Positions 7,624 to 30,600 of a stretch of DNA of 64,000 bases are shown in pieces. Source of the DNA: Lepidodermella squamata (Eukaryota > Animalia > Gastrotricha); assembly GCA_047495785.1 (NCBI GenBank), contig JBLDXI010000024.1, positions 4,588,001 through 4,652,000 on the forward strand, in the 5' to 3' direction. Position numbers and translations under genes: made by a program. The notes under the pieces are model-generated. The model did not search any database and was not told where the DNA came from. It saw only the letters and a program-made list of their open reading frames with translations. Positions within the stretch are counted from its first letter, which is position 1, and each line of letters opens with the position of its first letter.

Positions 7624-9494
7624 GTTTTTGAATATTGTCGAATCGCAAAATAAATTTTACGGGATAGCAAGCTCGTAAAGCCATTTACTGTTCTCTCCAG
7701 GTTCGAGAGGCATCACTCAAAAGCTTTTTTGGGGTGCTTTAGACCCAACTTCGATCTTGAAGCGACACATTAGTGCTAATTTGCCATTCCTTCACGCTAA
7801 ATGCATGGTCAAAGTATGCAAGCATCGCCGCTCTACCATTGCTATTATTACAACTCTGGCATGGACCCATTGAACGTCAATCACTCGATCAAGCTCAACA
7901 GATGACGTCAATAACGTCACGCAGTAGGTCTGGAAACCTCGCAAAACATAAGCATTAGTAAAACCGATGTTTAAAGATGAAAATCATGCGGGTGTCAATG
8001 CGCTTTCAACCTTTTGTGTATCGTTGATTTATTTTGAATGTGGCTGACCGAAAAACGCAGAAGTCATGCGTGCGGTTCGTGCCGTCAGCACTACCATTCA
8101 CGTGAAGAATAAGTAGGCAACTATGCACGCTAGACACTTCTCATTTAGAGTCCATGTTGATGTTTGATGTTACAGCCACTGTACTACTATTTTGCAGGTC
8201 AAATGTCACACGTGCCCACGTGATCAAAGCGCGGAAATGATTCGAATTAACAAATTGTGAATAAATCTGGGATCTGAGAGGAAAATCACACTTACTCCTA
8301 ACTCAACTCAAGGATAGAGTTGTCATTGAGGGTACCGTACTCCCAGTCTCCCCGCTACTTCTCGCACTGCTAGATGAATACCCCGGCTTTCGAAGCAAGC
8401 GATCGGTTGTTACAAAAGATTTCTTGGTAGTTACTAGTTTTCCAGTAGTTACTTAGCTCGAACAGGAAAGGATTTTTGCTGTATTGCTGTCCATTTCGTG
8501 TAATTTGAACAAATAATACGAGCGAAGCGAGGAAATTATTTGGATTTTCCACTAAAATGAGCTCCAAAACCCCCTGAAAATGATGATATAAAGGACACTT
8601 GCTCATTGCGCATTGCCTCAAGCAAGCGCAAACATTAATCTCGAATCGATAAAGACGCGCTGGGCTCGAAACTGGCCGGGTTATCTTTTTGCAGCAAACT
8701 TAAATGGATTAAAGGCGCGCAATGAATGCGATAGCCAAGACAATGTCGCAGGGTGGGCGACAGAACGAGAAATAAATGGCGTAAAACTATTTTTGCATTT
8801 CCGCAAGTCAGTCGCTTGCCGGAACAACTGAGCGCTACTGTTTTCTGTGCATCAAATGCATTACGCCATCTGTTTCTAGTTTAGTCAAGTCGTTCTGTCG
8901 CCCACCCGGCGATATGTTCAGTATTTCAAAATTCCGACCAATCGATTCGTTAAATATCTAATATGTCTTGGATAAGTTTGAAGCCAAATCGCTGAACTTT
9001 CCTTCCGTACTTGAGGCATCGTACTTGGGGAACCTTGGGGGACCTTGACAAGTTCTGAGTTTTTAATAAGTTGATCAATTGCGAAAGTTTAGAAGCGATC
9101 TGTCTAAACAGTGTGGCGAGGTTTTAGCCGAATTTTCCAGATGGATTGATGTTGTATCTTACATATTTATGAGCCAGCCACAGTTACCCAGCCATTGTTT
9201 CGAGAGCGACGTCTTGCCAAGCGACACTTCACTCGCTTTGCGAATATTGATTCGAAAAATATATCATGAACTAACCGTTCCACTCATGAATCATTCAGCA
9301 GGTAAAAAACCGTTGCGAAATAGTTACTGAATGGTGAAATCCATTGTTTCCGCTCGCCTTTGTTTTCACTTGCATGTTGGCAATAAATTTGCACTATAAA
9401 GCAGCTAAGCTGGAAATTAGACAAAACTGCCCTATCATGGCGGCGTTATCGTGTTTTTGTCTGACTGATTCAAAATTATTCAAATAAAAATACC

Positions 9495-12400
9495 ATGCGA
9501 CTTCTTCTGCTGGGTTTTTCTGTAATCTTTCTGATCAATTTGAGAGCTGCCAAAGGCCGTTAGTGCGTTGAAAGCAGAAAATATGACCTCATTTTTTCTT
9601 TACAGAGACATGTTACCCAGCCTGCCAGAATGGCAATTGCACAGCGACAAACACGTGCTCGTGCAACATTGGGTGGGGCGGAGCTCAATGTGAACAAGCG
9701 GCACCAACAAGTTAGTATCATCTGCTTAAGGCTACATATTATTGATTATTAATCATTCCAAACTTAGTTTGTACGAGCAGTGCTCAATGCGCTAATGGTG
9801 GGACATGCTCAGAAAAGAACTGTTATTGCCCTGGTTCATGGACAGGCCCAGCATGCGCAGACACAGGTTTGCTTCTACCTTATATTGGGATTTGCCCATC
9901 ATTTTGGACCTGATATAGGAACTGTTATGTGTCATCCAACTGGCTACGACTATCCATACTGCTACAACGGCGGCACCTGCACTTGGAGTGGATCAACAAG
10001 CGCTTGCTACTGCAGAAATGGATACACCGGGAAATATTGTGAAACAGGTTTGTTTCTATCGACTCCCTTCCATTAGATATTCTGTCTCTGCCTTCCTCTA
10101 GTTCTGTGTAGCCAACCGTGTCAAAATGGAGGTTCCTGTACTGCTACCGAAACTTGCAACTGTGTTGGTGGTTATACTGGGACTTACTGCAATACATTTT
10201 CTTGTGCAAGCCCGTGTCAAAATGGTGGCAGTTGTGTGGCTCCTAATACTTGCAGCTGCGTGGATGATTGGACTGGGCCAACATGCAATACATGTGAGGA
10301 GATATTTGTCGTTTTCGATCCGTTTTATCCCGATAGTATCAATTACAGCTACTGCCTGCCAGAACATTGAACTACTGTCAAAGCTCGCCTCCTGGGGAGG
10401 TTCCATAGCAGGATCAAGCGGGGTTCCCGCAAATGGTGACGGAAATTTACTGGCTGGCAACTTCTGGCAGCCAACCGGCACAGAATGGAACATTTACATT
10501 GAATTCAACTTTGGTCGCGAGGTTTCGGTAAAAACCATCGGCATAGCGGCTGGCTCTGCTGGTATCGGTTACATCGCGACTTACTCGCTATCCTTCCTAG
10601 CTAAAGCTGGACTTGGCGAGTTGATGGTTCCTGTGCTCACAAATATGTCGGATCCTAACAGCCCACCCGTGATCTACACCACTTTCCCGAACGCGTCAAA
10701 TAACATTTATTTCTATCTAACCACTCTATGTCCTGTTGTTCGAACGCAAAAGCTGAGAATTCACGTTAAGACCGGCTCGGGAGCGCTGACTAATGTTCGC
10801 TCTCGGTTTTTGATCTACGGCTGCCCAACTTATGCTGGATGCACAGTTTGCTCAGCAGGCAGTCAATGCCTTTGCCCCATAGGTTACACTAGCAATGACA
10901 CAACTCTTAATCCATGGCCTCATTGCGGTATTTTATTGTTTCGCAATATCACTGTTCCTATCGCATTTATTTTTCAGACCAACTGACTTTGCCTGTTTTG
11001 GACTGCGAGGATATCGCGATGCGCCAGCCTAGTGCTCAAAGTGGCGTCTATACAATTTATCCGATCGGATCTCCGCCCATCCAGGTTTTCTGCGATATGA
11101 CTTCGCTTGGTGGAGGCTGGACAGTTTTCCAACGCCGCGCTTCACCAGCAGTGGATTTCAACCGAAACTGGGTCGACTATCAGTCATTTTTCGGATCATT
11201 CAGTGACAGCTTTTGGCTGGGCCTAGACAGCATCTCGACAATTACCTACACCCCCTATAACTCATATAAAATGGCCATCAAAGCTTCAGATTTGGACTTC
11301 AATTACAACGGTCTTTACACTTGGAAGGGCTTCAGAATCAGCCCTGCTGCGAGCAACTACACTCTCGCTTATACATCGGTTGGGATCGGCAATATGGGAA
11401 ACAATTTAGCGAACGCTCAGAACAGACCATTCAGCACCAAAGATCGTGACAACGATAACGTAGCTGGTTCGAATTGTGCTGCTGACAACATGGGAGGCTG
11501 GTGGTACGGCACTACATGCGGCGTCTCAAGCTTAAATGGGTAGGAAATTCGAGAAATGGGTTGAGTACCGTAATTATATAGGTTGCATTCTCAGAGTTTA
11601 CAACTCAACCGTGGCTTATCAAGGCGTTATGTGGATCCCATGGGTTACATCGGTTTTCTCTTTGCGAAAGGCGCAGATGATGGTGAGAAGACAACAAATT
11701 GACTACTTTGGAACCCCAGGTAAGATTCATGAGAAAGTTTTTATAGCTTTAATGTTTCTTTTCAAGCTATTGCATTGACCTATACTAACCCTGCTGATTG
11801 TTCGGACATTGCGATTAACATGCCAAATGCACCTAGTGGAGTCTACACGATCTATCCACCCGGCGGCAATCCAGTCCAAACGTATTGTGAAATGGTGGCT
11901 CTCGGCGGGAATTGGACTGTGATTCAAAGGAATATCTACGGTTCTCCTCAGAGCTTTAATCAAAATTACGCAAGTTACGAAACAGGCTTCGGAAATCTGA
12001 ATGACGCTTTCTACCTTGGGAATACTGCAATCAACCAGCTAACTTCAGCTGGACCTCTTTACCAACTGGCCATTGTGCTTGAATTTACAAATGGCAATTT
12101 CAGGACTGCGAGATACAAGACTTTTTCGATAGAGAAGGCAGTGACGAATTACAAATTGAATGTTACTGGTTACAACTGGCTTGACGATGTTGAAACCGCA
12201 GGCGATTCGTTACTCTCCCACTCTGGGCAAGGATTCCAGGTTTATTCCAATCGATCGGGTGGCTGGTGGTTCAAAGACTGGGTCGCTGGGTCGTGCCTCG
12301 ACTCAAATTTGAATGGAGTAGCCATGAATAACACATTCGAGCAGGGAATCGTTTGGTCTTCCTGGAAAAGCCGAGTTAATTCGATCAAAAACAGTGTCAT

Positions 12401-21400: not shown

Positions 21401-21499
21401 ACAATTTTCCCGCAAAAACAACCGGGAGGCGGCGCCTATTACGATTTTCTTAGACGATTTAGCGCGCATGACGTTTCAAAAACAGTCAGCTACAACTAA
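9495..21499 (+). CDS. Polycystin-1-like receptor/channel, copy B (multi-exon, roughly 3,400 aa): SP-5xEGF-F5/8C-4xFReD-PAN-3xSushi-7xEGF-S/T stalk-GAIN-like-TM1-PLAT-TMs-polycystin channel
   Basis: ATG 9495 with signal peptide MRLLLLGFSVIFLINLRAAKG. The short GT-AG introns I traced link the ORFs in compatible phases. FReD motifs (GGGWTVFQRR, FWLGLD, FSTKDRDND, GGWWY). PKD1 hallmarks HPWLSIIKRP..SNWTRAERLSC, GPIRIRQQRV, YKTGGYYVDL, WLDNST..FVDFVLYN. Confidence 0.88.
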
Positions 21500-21910
21500 A
21501 TTTAGCTCCATCGAATGTTGCGTCATAGACGAAATTTGAACACATGCAATGTTATCAATGAATGATTGAAACGGCTATAAAATAAACTAATGGATGCATT
21601 GAAAGAAATGGGGAAATGTTGGGTTTGCATCAGGGAAATATTTGGGGTAGCGATTTCCAATTATTTTTGCCTTTCAGGAAACTTATGGCAGGATTGTGCT
21701 CGGCAAATCCTCAGCCTTCTGCGGTTCGCAACTTTTCTGGCCAGAAAAGATATCTGTTTGAACTATTGCGTCTCAATAAGGATGGCGCGGTAGTTCGGTT
21801 TTGATGCTGGAAAAACTCGAACTCCAAGCGAAAACTCCAAGCTAATGAAATAATCATGAGGCATTTCTCGACGCCACACGCGTTTGTCGCGTTTGATTGT
21901 TCAGCGGAAT

Positions 21911-22314
21911 CTGCAACAAACACATGCTCTTGTAACATTGGGTGGGGCGGAGCTCAATGTGAGCAAGAAGCACCAACAAGTCTGTATCATCGGTTAAAGG
22001 CTTAATCCTACTAATCTTTCCATCCTCAGTTTGTACTAGCAGTGTTCGGTGCGCTAATGGCGGGACTTGCTCGGAAAAGAACTGTTATTATCCTGGTTCA
22101 TGGACAGGCCCAGCATGCGCAGACACTGGTTTGCTTCGAATCTTATTGGGTTTTACCTTTGAACCCATCTTCACGGCAAGACTACCCGGTGGCTTCGCCT
22201 GTTATGAGTTTCTCAGCCGGTTCAGTGAGCATAACTATACTAACTTTTCTGCCCCATTTAAAAGTCTGCTAATCAGACGAAAGACAAATTTGATTTGGTT
22301 AAAGTGTGGAAGCC
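21911..22314 (+). pseudogene. Chimeric relic: EGF exons 2-3 of a PKD1-like paralog fused at ~22158 to a copy of the last exon/3' UTR of copy A
   Basis: 21911-22157 matches exons 2-3 and adjacent introns of copies B-D, with C>Y damage (TGTTATTAT). 22159-22314 matches 1225-1412 with a small internal deletion. Confidence 0.88.
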
Positions 22315-23665
22315 ATCATCTCTGAACTAATGAAACAACTAGAACTGTTAGCAAATTCGAACCTATTACTAGCAGATCAAAAACTGACTATTTTGACTCA
22401 ATTCATCTGGCCAAAGCTTATTTATCCGTTTCAAACGGCGCCAATTAAAGCAGGAAAACATTTTTGGAATTCGTTGACGTCATTATGCGTAGCGTCGTTA
22501 AAGAATGCGTCGGTTTGCCTACAAGCACACCCACTAGCTTCTTCTATGCTGCTCGTAAACATCGTGGTGTTGGCCTTCCGAAAGCTACTTGGGAAGCTTA
22601 TCTTCAAATATATAATATTTGTAGAAAATTGTTGGTTAACGGCGAACCCCTGGTACTGGCCTGCAGAAACCTTGAGAAGGAAATGGAAGAATGTCTAGCG
22701 AAACTTGATGTTGACCTTAACAATGATGAGCTTGATCAGATTCTGGATGATGATTTGGAAAACAATGATCGATTCGACCCGGAGAAAAATCTTCCTCCGA
22801 ATGCTCAGATTATACGTAGCACTCTTCGACTGCGAGAATTTGAAACATGGTGCAGCTTGGATCAAAAGAGTTGCCCAGTTCAAATGCGTGCCCAAAACAA
22901 ACAATTGGGTTTTTCGGAGAAATGGGTTAAGCGTTGCTGAATGGACCTTGGCGATCAAAATGATTACAAACACGGCTCCGGTTAGAGGGGTACCAGGTGT
23001 CAGTCAGGACGGAAACCAGTGTCGTCGATGCGACGCTGAGATTGAATCTCTTGCTCACGTTCTTGGCGCCTGCTCCTACAACTCGTTGCTAATCACTTCG
23101 AGACATAACAAAATTCGCCAGAAAATAGCGAACGAATTGCGCGGCCAGGGATATAATGTCACTGAGGAAGGACATTGTGTAGCCAGCAACAGCTCTTCTC
23201 GACGCTTTGATATCCTAGCCCTCCGAAAAGGAAGCCGAACAGGAATAATTATTGATCCAACTATCAGATGCGAGTCTTCGCAAAAACAATTCGAATTGGT
23301 CGATGCGGAAAAACGCGCAATATACGAGCCATGTAGCAAGTTTATTTGCGAAGCATACAACCTAGATTCAATAGAAGTACACGGACTATGCATCGGTGCC
23401 CGCGGATCCCTGACAACGGAAGCCGTAAAACTTCTATGCGCGACTATGGAATCAACGCCGGCACAGCCATCGAAATCGCTTAAAGATAGTATTCGAAGTC
23501 TTCACCACCATCTAAATTCCAACCAACGATAAATAACCAATACTTATTATTAAGAAATATCACCGATAATGAAGTTAATTAATTCATATCTCTGTGTCTT
23601 AAAGGCAAGCAATGTTACTAGGAATTATGTAACGCAGACCACCAATAAATCGGTATCTCTCTCTC
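22315..23665 (+). mobile_element. 5'-truncated, frameshifted non-LTR retrotransposon with restriction-like endonuclease (R2 group, NeSL-like)
   Basis: RT C-terminal/thumb-like segment, CCHC knuckle CRRC..ESLAHVLGAC, RHN motif and RLE motifs (RRFDI, IIDPT, KRAIY) spread over three frames. AATAAA at 23644 then a (TC)5 tail. Absent from the paralogous empty site at ~1412-1419. Confidence 0.88.
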
Positions 23666-24378
23666 TAGGATGGCATTGATTGCAAGTAATTGACATATAA
23701 CAGGAGAACAGATTAACGGCTTGGGCAGCCCCGAACTCTTGATATTCATGATCTAAAATTGTGAATGCGTTTATTCATAGTTATTTCGAATGTCGATAAC
23801 ATGATAGTTTACTGCGACATATTAGGCCAGCAAAAGACTACCAGAGTTTTCTGACTGACGCATTAAAGAAGGCTTGCAATTATTCGAAGTTCTTAGCGGC
23901 CATTTGGTAAGCGAAATAATCGGGTTTTGGAATTTGAGGATGAAGTTTTATAGCTTTTTTAACGTTTCACGTTAGATAGTAGGTTCAAATATCTATCTTT
24001 GTCATTACATTGTGCTTGAGCTAAATAGTAGAATTTCTGGGCGCGCGCTGATTGGTCAATCGATCGTTGCTATGACTCCCGGATGAAACATGTTGGTTGT
24101 GCGATCCATGAAATTTTTTGCAACAAGTGTTTTTTGCCACAGTAAATTGCTACGATTATTATGGGGTTTACGCTCGTGGTCCATGGAAACCGTGCAGAGG
24201 GTGTGGCAAGGTCATTTTTGCATAAATAGAAAATAATTTATTAGTGGATTGCACGACTAAATTGTTTCATCCCGGAGTCATAGCAACAATAAATTGACCA
24301 ATCAGCGCGCGGGTCAAAGTGCTACTTACTACTTGAAACACAATGTTAAATTCTTCCTAACCATAATAACGCCGCATG
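23666..24378 (+). repeat. Duplicated copy of the copy-A 3' flank (1419-1774) with an internal inversion and a MITE insertion
   Basis: Near-identical blocks to 1419-1440 and 1620-1774. 23692-23868 is the reverse complement of 1442-1618. Confidence 0.92.
24008..24345. mobile_element. MITE (338 bp), imperfect ~100-bp TIRs, TTA target-site duplication (PIF/Harbinger-like TSD)
   Basis: Ends CATTGTG...CACAATG with internal arms GCGCGCTGATTGGTCAAT..GTTGCTATGACTCC / GGAGTCATAGCAAC..ATTGACCAATCAGCGCGC. TTA flanks at 24005-24007 and 24346-24348. Empty site GTCATTAAATG at 1738-1748. Confidence 0.85.
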
Positions 24379-25094
24379 GGCTCCGACTCACATGTGTTAA
24401 ACCAGGACCGGTGAACTATCATCTAAGCTAAGAAACATAGACACTTGCGCATTGTGCATTGCCTCAAGCAAAAACAAACATTAATCTCAGATCGATTAAG
24501 GCGTGTTGAATTCGTTGCGCTCGACATTGTCCGGGCTATCATCGTTCAGCAAACAGGGTATAATACCGACCGGTTGTTTTGTTGAAAAAACCACCCACCG
24601 GTGAAAAAAAACCGGTTTTTTTGTATATGCTAAAATCACTGAAATGTATTATTTGACAAAGCGAGAGCTCGCTAGCAGTTAGTCCTATAGAGATTTAGAA
24701 GCGATTTTGCCGGTTTCATTTGAAAATTTCAACTTGAAAGGTCTAAAACCGCCTAATTATACTCTACCGGAAGTAAAACTGATTTCCCGATAGTTTCCTT
24801 ACTATGATCGATATCGTCATGAACATTCGGAATATAAGGTAGAATTTCCCGCTGAACATGATGGTGACATCCAATCACCCGCATCAGCTATCGAATATCG
24901 ATTATCGATTGGTAACTTAGTGGAACCAGTGAATCCACAATAATCTGATTGGTCAGGTGGTTTCAAGTTTCAAGTCTGTGATTGGTTGGTTCAAAGAGCA
25001 CGCGACACGCATGGTTCGAGGGGTTGGTTTAACTTTTTTTCTGCGATCACAAAATATGAAATGGGGCGGAAGGTGACCACCCTTCTGCCATCTA

Positions 25095-25167
25095 GCCGAG
25101 ATAGCTCAGTTGGGAGAGCGTTAGACTGAAGATCTAAAGGTCCCTGGTTCGATCCCGGGTCTCGGCG
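25095..25167 (+). tRNA. tRNA-Phe-GAA: tRNA-Phe (GAA)
   Basis: GCCGAGATAGCTCAGTTGGGAGAGCGTTAGACTGAAGATCTAAAGGTCCCTGGTTCGATCCCGGGTCTCGGCG. Intact cloverleaf with a T5 terminator downstream. Confidence 0.95.
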
Positions 25168-25236
25168 TACCTTTTTGCGCTGCCTTTGGCCTATCCTAAG
25201 TGCCATGTTAGAAGCTCGTGGGGGTTTTCTATCGCA

Positions 25237-25308
25237 GGCCCGTTGGTCTAGGAGTATGATTCTCGCTTTGGGTGCGAGAGGTCTCGGGTTCAATTCCCGA
25301 ACGGGCCC
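25237..25308 (+). tRNA. tRNA-Pro-TGG: tRNA-Pro (TGG)
   Basis: Canonical eukaryotic Pro body with paired stems and a T6 terminator. The D-loop reads AGGAGT instead of AGGGGT (possible G18 variant). Confidence 0.88.
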
Positions 25309-25391
25309 ACTCGTTTTTTCTTCATTTGAATTTAAACTTTCAACAAGGTATTGAAAATTTATCTCATAATCCAGGCATTAAATTTCATATC

Positions 25392-25463
25392 TCCCTGATG
25401 GTCTAGTGGTTAGGATTCCGCGCTTTCACCGCGGCGGCCCGGGTTCGATTCCCGGTCAGGGAA
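25392..25463 (+). tRNA. tRNA-Glu-TTC: tRNA-Glu (TTC)
   Basis: TCCCTGATGGTCTAGTGGTTAGGATTCCGCGCTTTCACCGCGGCGGCCCGGGTTCGATTCCCGGTCAGGGAA, intact stems. Confidence 0.95.
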
Positions 25464-25519
25464 AGTTTTGCTTTGAAATGAGTTTTTTGAAAAAATCATA
25501 CTGCTCATCGCAAAAAATC

Positions 25520-25597
25520 GAGCAAGGCTCAGGGGGATTGAACCGCTTCCAATCTTATGCTAACTGGGCAGACATTCTATCACTAAGCTACTTTGCC
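25520..25597 (-). pseudogene. Degenerate tRNA-like sequence, isotype unassignable
   Basis: Minus strand GGCAAAG-TAGCTTAGTGATAGA (A-box-like) ... GGTTCAATCC (B-box) ... CCTTGCT, then a T6 run. Anticodon arm not canonical. Confidence 0.5.
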
Positions 25598-25671
25598 TTT
25601 TGGCTTAAATGGCCATTCAGTCCCAAATTTAAGCTGCCGAAGTAAACGATTCGTGGCAAAAAATGTTTTGT

Positions 25672-25741
25672 TGGATACGGGTGCCGATCCCGTTGCCTCT
25701 CGCATGTTAAGCAACCGCTCTACCATTTGAGCTAATGCCCC
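25672..25741 (-). pseudogene. tRNA-Ala(AGC)-derived pseudogene with anticodon reading AAC
   Basis: GGGGCATTAGCTCAAATGGTAGAGCGGTTGCTTAACATGCGAGAGGCAACGGGATCGGCACCCGTATCCA has an Ala-type body, a mismatched anticodon stem and a shortened 3' acceptor strand. Confidence 0.75.
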
Positions 25742-25817
25742 ATGTATCTGAGTCAATATTTAACAAAGGCATTCTAAACAATAACGTAAAACTATTAGCA
25801 GTAATTTTTTGAAAAGC

Positions 25818-25899
25818 TGGCGCCCTTCGGGAGACTCGAACCCCGGAAACTGCGATTAACTGCTCACGGGAGACCATGGTTCGATTCCGTGCCAAGGAT
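25818..25899. pseudogene. Two back-to-back tRNA 3'-half relics (divergent B-boxes)
   Basis: Minus-strand CCGGGGTTCGAGTCTCCCGAAGGGCGCCA (25818-25846) and plus-strand CACGGGAGACCATGGTTCGATTCCGTGCCAAGG followed by T6. No 5' halves. Confidence 0.5.
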
Positions 25900-25956
25900 C
25901 TAGCTTTTTTCTCGATTTTAAAGCTGAACCATACGAATTGGCCAAAAATGTACAAC

Positions 25957-26029
25957 CGCCCGATGTGGGGCTCGAACCCACGACCCTGGGATTAAGAGTC
26001 CCATGCTCTACCGACTGAGCTAACCGGGC
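25957..26029 (-). tRNA. tRNA-Lys-CTT: tRNA-Lys (CTT)
   Basis: GCCCGGTTAGCTCAGTCGGTAGAGCATGGGACTCTTAATCCCAGGGTCGTGGGTTCGAGCCCCACATCGGGCG, intact. Confidence 0.95.
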
Positions 26030-26875
26030 TGAGACTGAGTAGTGTACTGCTAAATCTTATATTTCCTTACTGGTATTACTTCTGAATTAAAAGCAATCGC
26101 AGAAAAAATTAAATGGTGCGTATCGCGTGCTCTTTGAACCAACCAATCACAGACTTGATACCACCCGGCCAATCAGATAATTGTGGATTCACTGGTTCCA
26201 CTAAGAACTGATCGAGTGATCGATTTTTCATAATTTAGCCGAATCGATTTTATGTGATACAGTGTCTTTCTAAAGTATTTCTAAAGTATTTCAGCTGTGA
26301 GGTATTGATCCTGGGGACATAATGACCCTTAGACCCTTCTGACTGGCTGTTAACTATGAAAATTTGAGGTTTTTTGCGCGAAAACATCCCAAAAACCGCT
26401 ATTTGAAAAAACCGCGGTTTATACTGGTTGGAGTTTAAACCGAATACCTTGTCAGCAAGGAAACCAAATGAATACTCGTGGTCTGTTCACGAGTAATCAC
26501 GTTTGACCAATCGATTCGCCTTGTAAATAATGTTGGTATTGATCAGTTCCAAGGCAAGTTGCTCCACTTCCCGGTCTATCTGTAATATCGAGGTAAAACC
26601 AGGGAAAATGGGCGCAAGCAAATTCCGGCAACAGATGACATTTGCTTCACTACAAAAACTGAAAAACTAGCCATAGGTTATGTCTGCTTGGTTAGGTGAA
26701 CTTTCAAATTCGAATTCTTAGAACAAATTTGTCAAGCCCTGCACCTGATGATTAGCATCGATTAGCAAGTTATCAGTGAATAATAAGTTGTTGATCGTTT
26801 CCAAAAGTTTAGAGGCTAACTGTCTAAGCAGTGCGGCACGTTTTTAGCCGAATTTTCCTGATGGATTTATGTATT

Positions 26876-27320
26876 TATAAGGCCCTAGGGAAGGCTAGTT
26901 TCGAGCTTCGCCTCGCCTTATTATGCGAGTTTTTCCTTGAGTTTCGAGATTTCCTAGAGTTCGATGCGAAGAATAGCCGTACCGTGGGCCTTATTAGACA
27001 AGGCGAAGCGTTCACCGTTCCCCGTTCCCGATAAAACTGCAATTTTAATGGAAAAATGTGACATAATGGGTGATTTTCCGGGTGAAATGTGACTTTAAAA
27101 AATCAACCTTAAAATTTATTTCGAAAACGGCATTTTTGAAAGAATTTCATGCTGAAACAAGAAAAGTGATCTCGCTTCGCTCGAAGAGTTTTGAGTGCTT
27201 TTTCTCGCTTCGCTGGGACCTTCGGTGCTCACTGTAAAAATAAAAAAATCCCCATTAAATAAGCGGTTTCTTATTATGTTTATCATGTACGCTTCGCCTA
27301 GAGTAATATGTTTTATTTTG
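26876..27320. mobile_element. Unclassified ~440-bp insertion upstream of copy C
   Basis: Absent from the paralogous position upstream of copy B (~9150-9162). Begins with an imperfect palindrome ATAAGGCCC...GGGCCTTAT and has repeated GCTTCGC motifs. Boundaries approximate. Confidence 0.5.
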
Positions 27321-27650
27321 CATATATTTATGAGCTAGCCACTGTTACCCAGCCATTGTTTCGAGAGCGACGTCTTACCAAGTGACACTTCACTCGCTTC
27401 GCGAATATTGATTCGAAAAATATATCATTAACTAAGCGTTCCACGCATGAATCATTCAGCATGGGGTAAAACACGTGGAAAAAATATCTGAATTACGCAA
27501 TCCATTGTTTTCGTTCGCCATTGTTTTCCCGGTGTTGTTGGCAATGCATTCGCAAGGATAAAGGGACAGACCGTACCCTATCATGGCAACATTAGGGAGT
27601 ACAAGTTCCTGCCTGACTGATTCAACATTTGCAAAATAACTTTAAAGACC

Positions 27651-30600
27651 ATGCGACTTCTGTGTTTTTCCTTACTCTTTTTGATCAATTTGAGAGCTGC
27701 GGAAGGCCGTTAGTAGCTTGTAAATGGATAATATTTCTTTAATTTTTCCTTAATACAGAGACATGTAACCCAGCCTGCCAGAATGGCAATTGCATTGCAA
27801 CAAACACATGCTCTTGCAACATTGGGTGGGGCGGAGCTCAATGCGAACAAGCAGCACCAACAAGTTTGCATCACCTGTTTAAGGCTCCATATTACTGATA
27901 ATTTAATCATTAGTTTGTACGAACAGTGCTCAATGCGCTAATGGCGGGACTTGCTCGGAAAAGAACTGCTATTGCCCTGGATCATGGACAGGTCCAGCTT
28001 GCGCGGACACAGGTTTGCTTTGAGCCTTATCGGGTTTTACCCATCATTTTCGACTTGATATTATATAGGAACAGTTATGTGTCACCCTACTGGTTATGAC
28101 TATCCGTACTGCTACAACGGCGGCACCTGCACTTGGAGTGGACAAACAAGCGCCTGCTACTGCAGAAATGGATACACCGGGAAATATTGTGAAATAGGTA
28201 GGCTTTCGTCTATCGATTTCCATCCATCACATATTCTGTGTCTGCCTGGGTCCAGTTCTGTGTAGCCAACCTTGCCAAAACGGTGGCTCCTGTACTGCTA
28301 CCGAAACGTGTAATTGCGTTGGAGGCTACACGGGGACTTACTGCAATACATTTTCCTGTGCGAGCCCGTGTCAAAATGGCGGAAGTTGTGTGGCTCCCAA
28401 CACCTGTAGCTGCGTGGATGATTGGACTGGGCCAACTTGCTCTACATGTAAGGAGCGATTTCTCTTTTTCGAACAGATTATTTTCAAAAGAGGTATATCG
28501 ATTACAGCTACGGCCTGCCAGAGCATTGAACTACTGTCAAAGTTCGCCTCTTGGGGTGGTTCCATGTCAGGTTCATCCGGGAATGCCTATTATGGCAACG
28601 GGAATCACCCGGCTGGCAACTTCTGGAACCCAAGCGGCACAGAATGGAACATATACGTTGAATTCAACTTTGGCCGCGAGGTTTCGGTCCGAACAATTGG
28701 CATCGCGGCTGGCTCATCCGGCAGTGGCTACATCACATCTTACTCGTTATCCTTTCTCGCAAAAGCTGGGCTTGGCGAGTTGATGGTTCCAGTGCTCACA
28801 AATATGTCAGATCCTAACAGCGCCCCTGTGATATACACCACTTCCCCGAACGCGTCGAATAACATGTATTTCTATCCAACTACTCTATGCCCTGTTGTTC
28901 GAACGCAAAAGCTGAGAATTCACGTTAAGACCGGCTCGGGAGCGCTGACCAACATTCGTGCCCGGTTTTTGATCTACGGCTGCCCGACCTATGCTGGATG
29001 CACAGTTTGCTCAGCAGTTAGTCAATGCCTGTGCCCCATAGGTTACACTAGCAACGACACGACTCTGAATCCATGGCCTCATTGCGGTAATTTATTGACT
29101 GACTTGGCCACTGTTTCTACCTCGATAGATTTTAGATCAACTGACTGTGCCTGTTTTGGACTGTGAGGATATCGCGCTACGCCAGCCTAGTGCTCAAAGT
29201 GGTGTCTATACAATTTATCCGATCGGATCTCCGCCAATTCAGGTGTACTGCGATATGACATCGCTCGGTGGGGGCTGGACAGTTTTCCAACGCCGCGCTT
29301 CACCAACAGTGGATTTCAATCGAAACTGGGTCGATTATCAGTCATTTTTCGGATCATTCAGTGACAGCTTTTGGCTTGGCCTAGACAGCATCTCCACTAT
29401 TACTTACTCGGCTTATAACACCTACAAACTGACGGTCAAGGCATCAGATTTGGACTTCAATTACAACGGTCTTTACGCTATGAGGGGATTCAAAATTAGT
29501 CCTGCTGCTAGCAACTACACTTTCAGTTATGTAACAGCTAACATCGTCCAGATGGGAAACAATTTAGCGAGCGCTAATAACATACCATTCAGCACGAAAG
29601 ATCGGGACAACGACAACGTACCTGGCTCGAATTGTGCTGCTGATAACATGGGAGGCTGGTGGTATGGCACTAATTGCAGTGTTTCGAGCTTAAATGGGTA
29701 TGAAATTCGAGAAACGTGTTCAGTAACATAGTTATAAGTTGCATTTCCAGAGTTTACAACTCAACCGTGGCTTATCAAGGCGTTATGTGGATCCCATGGG
29801 TTACATCGGTTTTCTCTCTGAGGAAGGCACAGATGATGGTGAGAAGACAACAAAATGACTACTTCGGAACCCCAGGTGAGACTCTTGGAATACCCTTTAC
29901 CATCTTCAGTTTTTCTTTTCAAGCTGTTGCGTTAACATATACCAACCCTGCTGATTGCTCCGACATTGCGGTTAATATGCCCAATGCACCGAGTGGAGTC
30001 TACACAATCTACCCACCCGGTGGCAATCCAGTCCAAACGTATTGTGAAATGGTGGCTTTCGGCGGGAATTGGACTGTTATCCAACGAAATATCTACGGTT
30101 CTCCTCAGAGCTTCAATCATAATTACACAACTTACGAAACAGGCTTTGGAACTGCTAACGGAGCTTTTTACCTCGGAAATACTGCAATAAACCAAATCAC
30201 GTCAGCTGGGCCTCTTTACCAACTGGCTGTCGTGCTTGAATTTTCGAATGGCAATTTCAGGACTGCGAGATACAAGACTTTTTCGATAGACGGAGCTGCC
30301 TCCAATTACAAATTGAATGTTACTGGTTACAACTGGCTTGATGATGTTGAAACAGCAGGCGATTCGCTACTCTCCCACTCTGGGCAAAGTTTCCAGGTTT
30401 ATTCTAATAGATCGGGTGGCTGGTGGTTCAAAGACTGGGATTCTGGGTCGTGCCTCGACTCAAATTTGAATGGAGTAGCCCTGAATGATACATTCGAGCA
30501 AGGAATAGTTTGGTCTTCCTGGAAAGGCAGGGTTAATTCGATCAAAAACAGTGTCATGATGATTAGGCCACTGGCTCTGAAACCTTACGATTGCCTGGAT

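What the first reader, a model, noticed from the sequence alone, without database searches (positions are those of the whole stretch)
24554..26451. tRNA cassette packaged between long inverted repeats and nested in a hAT-like element: a candidate mobile tRNA array
Seen: four well-formed tRNA genes (Phe-GAA, Pro-TGG, Glu-TTC on +, Lys-CTT on -) plus several relics fill the 1.1 kb between two ~90-bp inverted repeats that differ by only 5 substitutions and one 7-bp duplication. The full-length genes point inward from each arm. The unit lies in a 1.9-kb segment with hAT-like ends and a near-perfect 8-bp TSD, and the paralogous region upstream of copy B has no tRNAs. Known: Pack-type DNA transposons capture host sequence, and tRNA genes can act as chromatin barriers through TFIIIC. 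Inference: a non-autonomous DNA transposon carrying a multi-isotype tRNA cluster, able to move tRNA gene dosage or a portable insulator. It is not SINE-like, since it holds several whole isotypes and has no poly-A tail.
Basis: partly seen in the sequence, partly recalled or inferred. Interest (0 to 1): 0.9.

Follow-up and report, generated by a model that had tools for sequence, protein, structure and literature searches.

The report
tRNA gene block inside a transposon
A 1.9-kb piece of jumping DNA with hAT-type ends has landed between two copies of a tandemly repeated gene, and its load is four intact transfer-RNA genes framed by long inverted repeats; this suggests that tRNA gene blocks can travel as transposon passengers in this small invertebrate, but I could not check whether other copies exist.

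Summary
There are four intact tRNA genes (Phe, Pro, Glu on +; Lys on -) and at least four relics. They lie between inverted repeats of 96 and 89 nt that differ by 5 substitutions and a 7-nt duplication.

The surrounding 1,898 bp (24554-26451) is an insertion relative to the paralogous spacer upstream of the previous gene copy.
- It has an 8-bp target duplication (7 of 8) and CAGGG/CAAGG ends (7 of 8).
- The hexamer AAACCG occurs 4+4 times in its two ends and nowhere in its middle (P about 4e-9).

These are hAT-type hallmarks.

The inner unit starts exactly at CTTAG and is flanked by AA|AA. Earlier notes of this scan describe an intact transposon in this genome with "CTTAG termini, 2-bp TSD" sitting in a tRNA array. 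So a nested second element is my leading reading, but homology to that element is untested.

Copy number, mobility and expression could not be tested.
- Only one public run holds this DNA.
- All pattern scans were blank.
- No close relative is in the protein collections.

The scan has noted three other inverted-repeat-bounded tRNA cassettes elsewhere in this genome; none has been followed up.

Verdict: a credible single-locus case of a transposon-borne tRNA cluster. It is a new variant of cargo-carrying DNA transposons; the insulator idea is untested.

The parts
24546..24553 (.). left copy of the 8-bp target-site duplication (TCAGCAAA)
   Evidence: the paralogous spacer has one copy, GCAGCAAA, at 8692-8699
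24554..24803 (+). left end of the outer hAT-type non-autonomous element: terminus CAGGGTAT and a subterminal zone with 4 AAACCG/CGGTTT hexamers, including the palindrome AAAAACCGGTTTTT at 24607-24620
24914..24915 (.). AA next to the left arm; possible 2-bp target duplication of the inner unit
   Evidence: chance about 1 in 16
24916..25011 (+). left inverted-repeat arm (core). It starts at CTTAG and holds two CCAAT/Y-box motifs (24946, 24979). After a 16-nt indel it continues to about 25048.
25095..25167 (+). tRNA-Phe (GAA), intact
25237..25308 (+). tRNA-Pro (TGG), intact
25392..25463 (+). tRNA-Glu (TTC), intact
25522..25599 (-). Thr-AGT-like tRNA relic that still has a T-run terminator
   Evidence: relaxed ARAGORN only
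25669..25741 (-). Val-AAC-like tRNA relic with a broken acceptor stem
   Evidence: 25.9 bits against a gathering score of 29
25815..25859 (-). truncated 3' half of a Lys-like tRNA relic (72% like the Lys gene's 3' half)
   Evidence: (family D2)
25860..25911 (+). truncated 3' half of a tRNA relic (Asp-like by eye) with a T-run; it abuts the previous relic head to head
   Evidence: (family D1); the isotype is my own reading
25957..26029 (-). tRNA-Lys (CTT), intact
26117..26205 (-). right inverted-repeat arm (core). It ends in CTAAG and holds two CCAAT/Y-box motifs. The inner extension begins at about 26092.
26206..26207 (.). AA next to the right arm; possible 2-bp target duplication of the inner unit
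26202..26451 (-). right end of the outer element: 4 AAACCG/CGGTTT hexamers at 26393-26437 and the terminus ...ATACCTTG
26452..26459 (.). right copy of the 8-bp target-site duplication (TCAGCAAG)
8692..8699 (.). unoccupied paralogous target site in the spacer upstream of the previous gene copy

Best explanation
The tRNA block reached this spacer as passenger DNA of cut-and-paste DNA transposons.

Shown:
- 24554-26451 is extra DNA relative to the paralogous spacer.
- It carries the marks of a non-autonomous hAT-type element: an 8-bp target duplication, CAGGG/CAAGG termini, AAACCG subterminal repeats at both ends only, and no transposase.
- Inside it, a 1,290-bp unit (24916-26205) is bounded by inverted repeats that are 94% identical. 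These begin exactly at CTTAG and are flanked by AA on each side.
- This unit holds four intact tRNA genes, each with its own terminator, plus relics.

Inferred:
- The inner unit is itself a non-autonomous element nested in the hAT element. It is probably a derivative of the family with CTTAG ends and a 2-bp duplication that earlier notes report as an intact 5.6-kb element lying in a tRNA array of this genome.
- Its interior would have been replaced by a stretch of an already decaying tRNA cluster, for example by template switching during gap repair after excision.
- tRNA genes carry their promoters inside the gene, so the four intact ones should be transcribed by RNA polymerase III wherever the element lands.
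For: Empty paralogous site:
- The left homology stops exactly at the target octamer.
- Once 24554-26451 and a spacer-1 hairpin (8743-8915) are removed, the two spacers are colinear at 73% over 127 nt.
- The right-flank anchor is reached by 1 of 1000 shuffles.

Outer ends:
- Target duplication 7 of 8 and termini 7 of 8.
- AAACCG occurs 4+4 times in the terminal 250-nt zones and 0 times in the 1.4-kb middle, against 0.69 per kb in the window (P about 4e-9).
- The AAAAACCG-type palindrome is found almost only at these ends.
- No ORF of 150 aa or more lies in the element.

Inner arms:
- 26 perfect matches start at CTTAG after 6 unmatched bases, with AA|AA flanks.
- The arms differ by 5.6%, against 20-24% between the paralogous spacers, so the arms are younger than the gene duplication.

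Context:
- The same spacer has taken two other lineage-specific insertions, a retroelement tail at 22315-23665 and a 335-bp MITE at 24011-24345 with a TTA duplication.
- Leads only, unchecked: notes s1-379575 and s1-404878 (CTTAG ends, 2-bp TSD, in a tRNA array); s1-402076, s1-365981 and s1-422008 (other inverted-repeat-bounded tRNA cassettes); s1-421467 (an intact hAT in this genome).
Against: - There is a single locus only. No second copy of the arms or of the outer ends occurs in the 64-kb window, and none could be looked for in the genome.
- The empty site is paralogous, not allelic or orthologous.
- The right junction is resolved only to within about 20 nt.
- A 2-bp flank match is weak evidence (1 in 16).
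- Weak inverted similarity continues about 45 nt outside CTTAG (62%; 3 of 500 shuffles). The nested reading must explain this by a palindromic, ATCGAT-rich target.
- Homology of the arms to the CTTAG-ended element was not tested.
- The other tRNA-cassette notes do not contain the word CTTAG.
- Expression is untested.
Confidence: 0.5

Rival explanations
1. There is one composite hAT Pack-type element, not two nested ones. On this reading the hAT-type element captured a tRNA cluster directly. The long inverted repeats are part of the captured or repair-synthesised DNA, for example an inverted duplication made by template switching, and not the ends of a second transposon.
For: - The outer hAT-type marks are the strongest evidence at this locus.
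- The inverted similarity does not stop cleanly at CTTAG. It continues weakly about 45 nt outward and 20 nt inward.
- The two arms sit at nearly the same distance (83 and 87 nt) upstream of different tRNA genes.
Against: - Identity jumps sharply from about 60% to 26 of 26 at CTTAG, and the flanks are AA|AA.
- Other notes describe inverted-repeat-bounded tRNA cassettes without hAT ends, one of them inside a MULE transposase (unchecked).
Confidence: 0.25
2. This is a resident tRNA cluster that never moved. The ancestral spacer already held the cluster, a local inverted duplication made the arms, and the paralogous spacer lost the segment by deletion between 8-bp direct repeats. The transposon-like ends would then be chance.
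For: - Deletion between short direct repeats would also leave one copy of the octamer.
- The comparison is with a paralogue that has diverged by 24-27%.
- This genome is rich in tRNA clusters and arrays (earlier notes).
Against: - Inverted termini matching 7 of 8 right next to the repeats are expected about 4 times in 10,000.
- AAACCG is enriched at both ends only (P about 4e-9).
- The arms are far younger (5.6%) than the spacer duplication.
Confidence: 0.1
3. The arms are regulatory or boundary modules kept by selection. Each is a double CCAAT-box (NF-Y-type) unit upstream of an inward-facing tRNA gene. They would act as promoter or barrier sequences of tRNA clusters in this genome, not as transposon ends. 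This can coexist with the transposon readings.
For: - TGATTGGYYR occurs 6 times in 64 kb against 1.6 expected, and all 6 lie in inverted-repeat arms.
- Each arm has two boxes, 33 or 26 nt apart.
- The arms are better conserved than the sequence on either side of them.
Against: - Two of the six motifs lie in the arms of a plain 335-bp MITE that has no tRNA. This fits a transposon-borne motif better.
- There are no data on protein binding or transcription.
- The arms have no RNA structure and no Rfam match.
Confidence: 0.1

Closest known systems
Non-autonomous hAT elements (Ds-type, hAT MITEs)
   Same: An 8-bp target duplication, short terminal inverted repeats starting CAG/CAA (YARNG), short subterminal repeats at both ends (AAACCG here; Ac has AAACGG, from my own knowledge), and no transposase.
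   Different: The interior is not a deleted transposase gene. It is a set of intact RNA polymerase III genes between long internal inverted repeats. A matching autonomous partner was not identified.
Pack-TYPE transposons (Pack-MULE, Pack-CACTA, Pack-hAT; PMC8903248)
   Same: Non-autonomous TIR elements that carry captured host DNA. That paper also describes capture through neighbouring or nested insertions that are then re-mobilised.
   Different: Pack elements are described in plants and carry fragments of protein-coding genes. Here the load is whole, self-sufficient tRNA genes of four isotypes in an animal-like genome. The paper does not mention tRNA.
Dada DNA transposons (Kojima and Jurka 2013, PMC3706591)
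   Same: DNA transposons tied to multicopy tRNA and snRNA genes and tRNA arrays.
   Different: Dada inserts inside a tRNA gene with a 6-7-bp duplication and is flanked by the gene's halves. Here whole tRNA genes lie inside the element, the flanks are not tRNA, and the duplications are 8 and possibly 2 bp.
CTTAG-ended, 2-bp-TSD CMC/Transib-clade transposon noted in this genome (s1-379575, s1-404878)
   Same: CTTAG termini, a 2-bp flank repeat, and association with tRNA gene arrays.
   Different: I know that element only from earlier notes. The unit here has no protein gene.
tRNA-derived SINEs
   Same: Mobile DNA that contains tRNA-like sequence.
   Different: SINEs have one tRNA-related head, a LINE-related or A-rich tail, and move through RNA. 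Here there are several whole isotypes on both strands, inverted-repeat ends, and no tail.

Membership tests
hAT superfamily, non-autonomous member | 8-bp target-site duplication | tested here: met
   TCAGCAAA / TCAGCAAG (7 of 8), with a single copy at the paralogous site
hAT superfamily, non-autonomous member | Short terminal inverted repeats with YARNG-type termini (consensus from my own knowledge) | tested here: met
   CAGGGTAT and CAAGGTAT, 7 of 8 complementary
hAT superfamily, non-autonomous member | Short subterminal repeats at both ends | tested here: met
   AAACCG occurs 4+4 times in the terminal 250-nt zones and 0 times in the middle; P about 4e-9;
hAT superfamily, non-autonomous member | An autonomous partner with matching ends and a hAT transposase in the same genome | not testable with these tools
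I had no access to the rest of the genome.
hAT superfamily, non-autonomous member | Several copies with different flanks | not testable with these tools
Pack-TYPE transposon | TIRs and a TSD, no transposase, and an interior of captured host gene sequence | tested here: inconclusive
   TIR and TSD are met and there is no ORF of 150 aa or more. But the load is tRNA genes, not the protein-coding fragments used to define the class.
CTTAG-ended, 2-bp-TSD transposon family of this genome | CTTAG termini | tested here: met
   The arms begin at CTTAG (24916) and end at CTAAG (26205)
CTTAG-ended, 2-bp-TSD transposon family of this genome | 2-bp target duplication | tested here: inconclusive
   The flanks are AA|AA, but the chance is about 1 in 16 and no empty site exists for the inner unit
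CTTAG-ended, 2-bp-TSD transposon family of this genome | Terminal sequence homologous to the autonomous element | not testable with these tools
The findings look-up by sequence was blank.
Dada superfamily | Insertion inside a small-RNA gene with a 6-7-bp duplication | tested here: not met
   The flanks are spacer DNA and the duplication is 8 bp
tRNA-derived SINE | A single tRNA-related head with an A-rich or LINE-derived tail | tested here: not met
   There are four isotypes on both strands, inverted-repeat ends and no tail

The most novel reading that the evidence does not exclude
This genome may hold a family of DNA transposons whose non-autonomous members carry blocks of intact tRNA genes between long inverted repeats. 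Such a family would move blocks between the large tandem tRNA arrays and dispersed sites. It would be a DNA-level route for tRNA gene dispersal and cluster formation in an animal, with each landing bringing RNA polymerase III and TFIIIC sites next to host genes.
Probability: 0.3. Interest if true: 0.75.

Novelty: new variant of a known kind. Interest (0 to 1): 0.55.

Why it matters
How nuclear tRNA genes change place and come to lie in clusters is poorly understood. The known mobile tRNA-related elements move through RNA and are not working tRNA genes. A cut-and-paste element that carries several intact tRNA genes would be a concrete DNA-level mechanism.

This genome is packed with tandem tRNA cassettes and apparently active DNA transposons, so it could be tested here by a genome-wide copy survey and presence/absence typing. 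Each insertion would also place polymerase III genes beside host genes (here 1.35 kb upstream of a polycystin-like gene copy), which makes the barrier and position-effect ideas testable.

If it is only a single old insertion, it is a curiosity.

Tried and rejected
- **Reads.** No depth, joint or copy-number data could be obtained. Later searches used 24300-25090, 25464-25956 or short arm motifs only.
- **Public runs.** Only one run (X1, about half the sampled words) holds the non-tRNA parts. The 0.05-0.10 shares in 22 other runs match the fraction of the stretch that the tRNA genes themselves make up. So there are no population or related-species data.
- **Exact-pattern scans.** All were blank: arm motifs in metagenome, viral and prokaryote genome contigs, and the lineage-specific 3' part of tRNA-Pro in metagenome contigs.
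- **Synteny through the flanking polycystin-like gene.** The best proteins in both collections are only 40-44% identical and come from unnamed ENA metagenome contigs. No close relative was available.
- **Arms as a small RNA gene.** Rejected. There is no Rfam match at E up to 1 and the folding z-scores are 0.13 and 0.25.
- **Outer element as a hairpin-type MITE.** Rejected. Its two halves are not complementary overall (score 11 against a shuffle mean of 10.5).
- **Target duplication at the extended repeat boundary (24867/26255).** None is convincing.
- **Literature.** Six full-text searches returned no paper whose title or abstract describes a eukaryotic DNA transposon carrying intact tRNA gene clusters. 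This is not proof that none exists.
- **Findings look-up by sequence.** Blank for the arm.
Full report
**Setting.** The window is a tandem array of a large polycystin/REJ-like gene with EGF repeats. Gene copies end near 1213, 21405, 40337 and 53600, and the period is 13.5-20 kb. The finding lies in the spacer between the second and third copies (spacer 2, 21405-27796). The organism is an unidentified small invertebrate. Pond and wastewater metagenomes share its tRNA words, and the nearest Atlas cluster for its P450 is mostly from Rotifera. Earlier notes call it probably a rotifer with a 121-Mb genome full of tandem tRNA cassettes.

**Check of the observation.** Two independent tools find four intact tRNA genes, and only these, in 64 kb:

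| Gene | Coordinates | Strand |
|---|---|---|
| Phe-GAA | 25095-25167 | + |
| Pro-TGG | 25237-25308 | + |
| Glu-TTC | 25392-25463 | + |
| Lys-CTT | 25957-26029 | - |

- The Rfam tRNA scores are 53-70 bits. Each gene is followed within 15 nt by 4-6 T, the usual polymerase III terminator.
- Between Glu and Lys lie a Thr-AGT-like relic (25522-25599, -) and a Val-AAC-like relic (25669-25741, -; 25.9 bits, below the gathering score).
- Two truncated 3' halves also meet head to head at 25859/25860. This is a scar of an old rearrangement inside the cluster.
- The inverted repeats are real. 24916-25011 and 26117-26205 differ by five substitutions and a 7-nt duplication.
- Long inverted pairs are rare here: five of 25 nt or more within 6 kb in the whole window.

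**The outer 1.9 kb is an insertion with hAT-type ends.**
- BLAST of spacer 2 against the window shows that it is paralogous to spacer 1 in blocks of 76-82% identity.
- One block ends exactly at 24553 (spacer 1: 8699). Homology resumes after 26452.
- Two lineage-specific pieces interrupt the comparison: 24554-26451 in spacer 2 and a 173-nt hairpin, 8743-8915, in spacer 1. With both removed, the spacers are colinear across the junction at 73% over 127 nt.
- A right-flank anchor is reached by only 1 of 1000 shuffles.
- Spacer 1 has one GCAGCAAA. Spacer 2 has TCAGCAAA before and TCAGCAAG after the extra DNA.
- The extra DNA begins CAGGGTAT and ends with the complement of CAAGGTAT.
- New here: the hexamer AAACCG (or its complement) occurs four times in the first 250 nt and four times in the last 250 nt of the segment, and never in the 1.4 kb between. 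The window average is 0.69 per kb, giving a Poisson P of about 4e-9.
- The longer palindromic form AAAAACCG..TTT is found almost only at these two ends.
- An 8-bp duplication, YARNG-type termini and short subterminal repeats are the classical marks of hAT elements. That consensus is from my own knowledge.
- No ORF of 150 aa or more lies inside, so the element is non-autonomous.
- A deletion in spacer 1 between 8-bp repeats would explain the single octamer. It would not explain the inverted termini or the end-specific hexamers.

**The inner unit.**
- The near-perfect inverted repeat begins exactly at CTTAG (24916) and ends at CTAAG (26205). Six unmatched bases precede it, then come 26 of 26 matches, and AA lies on both outer sides.
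- Outside it, the inverted similarity continues weakly for about 45 nt (62%; 3 of 500 shuffles), in a stretch rich in the palindrome ATCGAT.
- Inside it, after a 16-nt indel, 20 nt match perfectly (0 of 500 shuffles).
- The arm cores lie 83 and 87 nt upstream of the first inward-facing gene on each side, Phe on the left and Lys on the right. So the arms are homologous but the genes next to them are not.
- The arms show no RNA-like structure (z = 0.13 and 0.25) and no Rfam match.
- Each arm holds two CCAAT/Y-box motifs. TGATTGGYYR occurs six times in 64 kb, against 1.6 expected. Four occurrences are in these arms and two are in the arms of the neighbouring 335-bp MITE at 24011-24345.
- That MITE has a clean TTA duplication and an empty site in spacer 1. 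It also shares the 9-mer GTTTCAAGT with the arms. This points to a transposon-borne motif, but the two elements do not align as simple homologues.

**Leads from earlier notes of this scan (unchecked unless stated).**
- The same genome is reported to hold an intact, transcribed 5.6-kb transposon of the CACTA-Mirage-Chapaev-Transib clade, with "CTTAG termini, 2-bp TSD", sitting in a tandem tRNA array (s1-379575, followed up; s1-404878).
- It is also reported to hold an apparently active hAT (s1-421467), a hAT carrying a whole gene (s1-391742), and a hAT-ended element with internal inverted repeats that lack a TSD (s1-422123).
- Three other tRNA cassettes bounded by inverted repeats are noted (s1-402076, inside a MULE transposase 2.1 Mb upstream; s1-365981; s1-422008).
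- I could verify only that my inner unit has CTTAG ends and AA|AA flanks. I could not compare sequences, and the three cassette notes do not contain the word CTTAG.

**Most likely mechanism.**
- The tRNA block came here by transposition as DNA.
- My leading reading (0.5) is a nested pair: a non-autonomous element with CTTAG ends whose interior is a stretch of an already decaying tRNA cluster, lying inside a non-autonomous hAT element.
- The arms differ by 5.6% and the paralogous spacers by 20-24%. So the structure is younger than the gene duplication.
- The relics are far more decayed than the arms, so they were probably already relics when the block was framed.
- Whether the inner unit entered the hAT element before or after it landed here cannot be told. 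The outer ends show 2 mismatches in 16 against 5 in 89 for the arms, which is not a significant difference.
- The main rival (0.25) is a single hAT Pack-type element whose long inverted repeats are part of the load or of repair synthesis.
- A resident cluster with chance transposon-like ends (0.1) fits the data poorly.
- A regulatory role of the CCAAT-bearing arms (0.1) is not exclusive of the others.
- Because tRNA promoters are internal, the four intact genes should be expressed at the new site. This is inference; no RNA evidence could be obtained.

**What could not be done.**
I worked beside those places from then on and sent none of their letters to any search tool.
- Only run X1 holds the non-tRNA parts.
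- Pattern scans of metagenome, viral and prokaryote contigs were blank.
- The closest proteins to the flanking gene are 40-44% identical, unnamed ENA metagenome products.

**Comparison with known systems.**
- It works like a Pack-type or cargo-carrying non-autonomous DNA transposon (PMC8903248). Its load, however, is whole polymerase III genes of four isotypes, not fragments of protein genes.
- It meets the testable hAT criteria.
- It is not a Dada element, which splits a tRNA gene and makes a 6-7-bp duplication (PMC3706591).
- It is not a SINE.
- None of the titles and abstracts returned by six full-text searches describes a eukaryotic DNA transposon with an intact multi-tRNA load. That is not proof of absence.

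**Verdict.** This is a new variant of a known kind, shown at one locus. Interest is 0.55. It would rise if the genome-wide survey shows a family, and fall if this is a lone old insertion.

Noticed in passing
window 24011-24345: A 335-bp MITE with 102-nt arms (77% complementary), ends CATTGTG...CACAATG and a TTA target duplication. Paralogous spacer 1 has the empty site (...GTCATTAAATGC, about 1741-1752). Its arms share CTGATTGGTCA and GTTTCAAGT with the tRNA-cassette arms, but in a different order.
   Followed up: partly
window 22315-23665: A 1.35-kb insertion specific to spacer 2, ending in a (TC)n run. Its 275-aa ORF (22705-23532) resembles the C-terminal tail of non-LTR retrotransposon proteins: a weak zf-RVT hint (E = 3.5) and Atlas neighbours with zf-RVT. 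It is probably a 5'-truncated retroelement.
   Followed up: partly
window 23692-23879 versus 1433-1618: A 186-nt segment that is 94% identical but inverted between the two paralogous spacers. In spacer 2 it is bounded by the short inverted words TTGCAAG and CTTGCAA. The flanks on both sides are colinear at 95%, much higher than the 76-82% of the rest of the spacers.
   Followed up: no
window 8743-8915: A 173-nt hairpin element (26-nt arms, 92% complementary) present only in spacer 1, about 45 nt from the unoccupied target site of the tRNA-bearing element.
   Followed up: no
window 25815-25911: Two truncated tRNA 3' halves (Lys-like on -, Asp-like on +) joined head to head near their anticodon loops. 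This is a scar of an inversion or illegitimate recombination between tRNA genes inside the load.
   Followed up: partly
window 21912-22157: A 246-nt partial copy of the 5' start of the polycystin-like gene (82-85% identical to the starts at 9644, 27796 and 41208). It sits alone in spacer 2, 500 nt after the end of the previous copy.
   Followed up: no
window 24887-24909 and 26215-26248: A cluster of ATCGAT/TATCGA palindromes on both sides of the inner unit. They resemble the insect DRE/BEAF-type CGATA motifs (from my own knowledge). They may simply be the palindromic target of the inner insertion.
   Followed up: no
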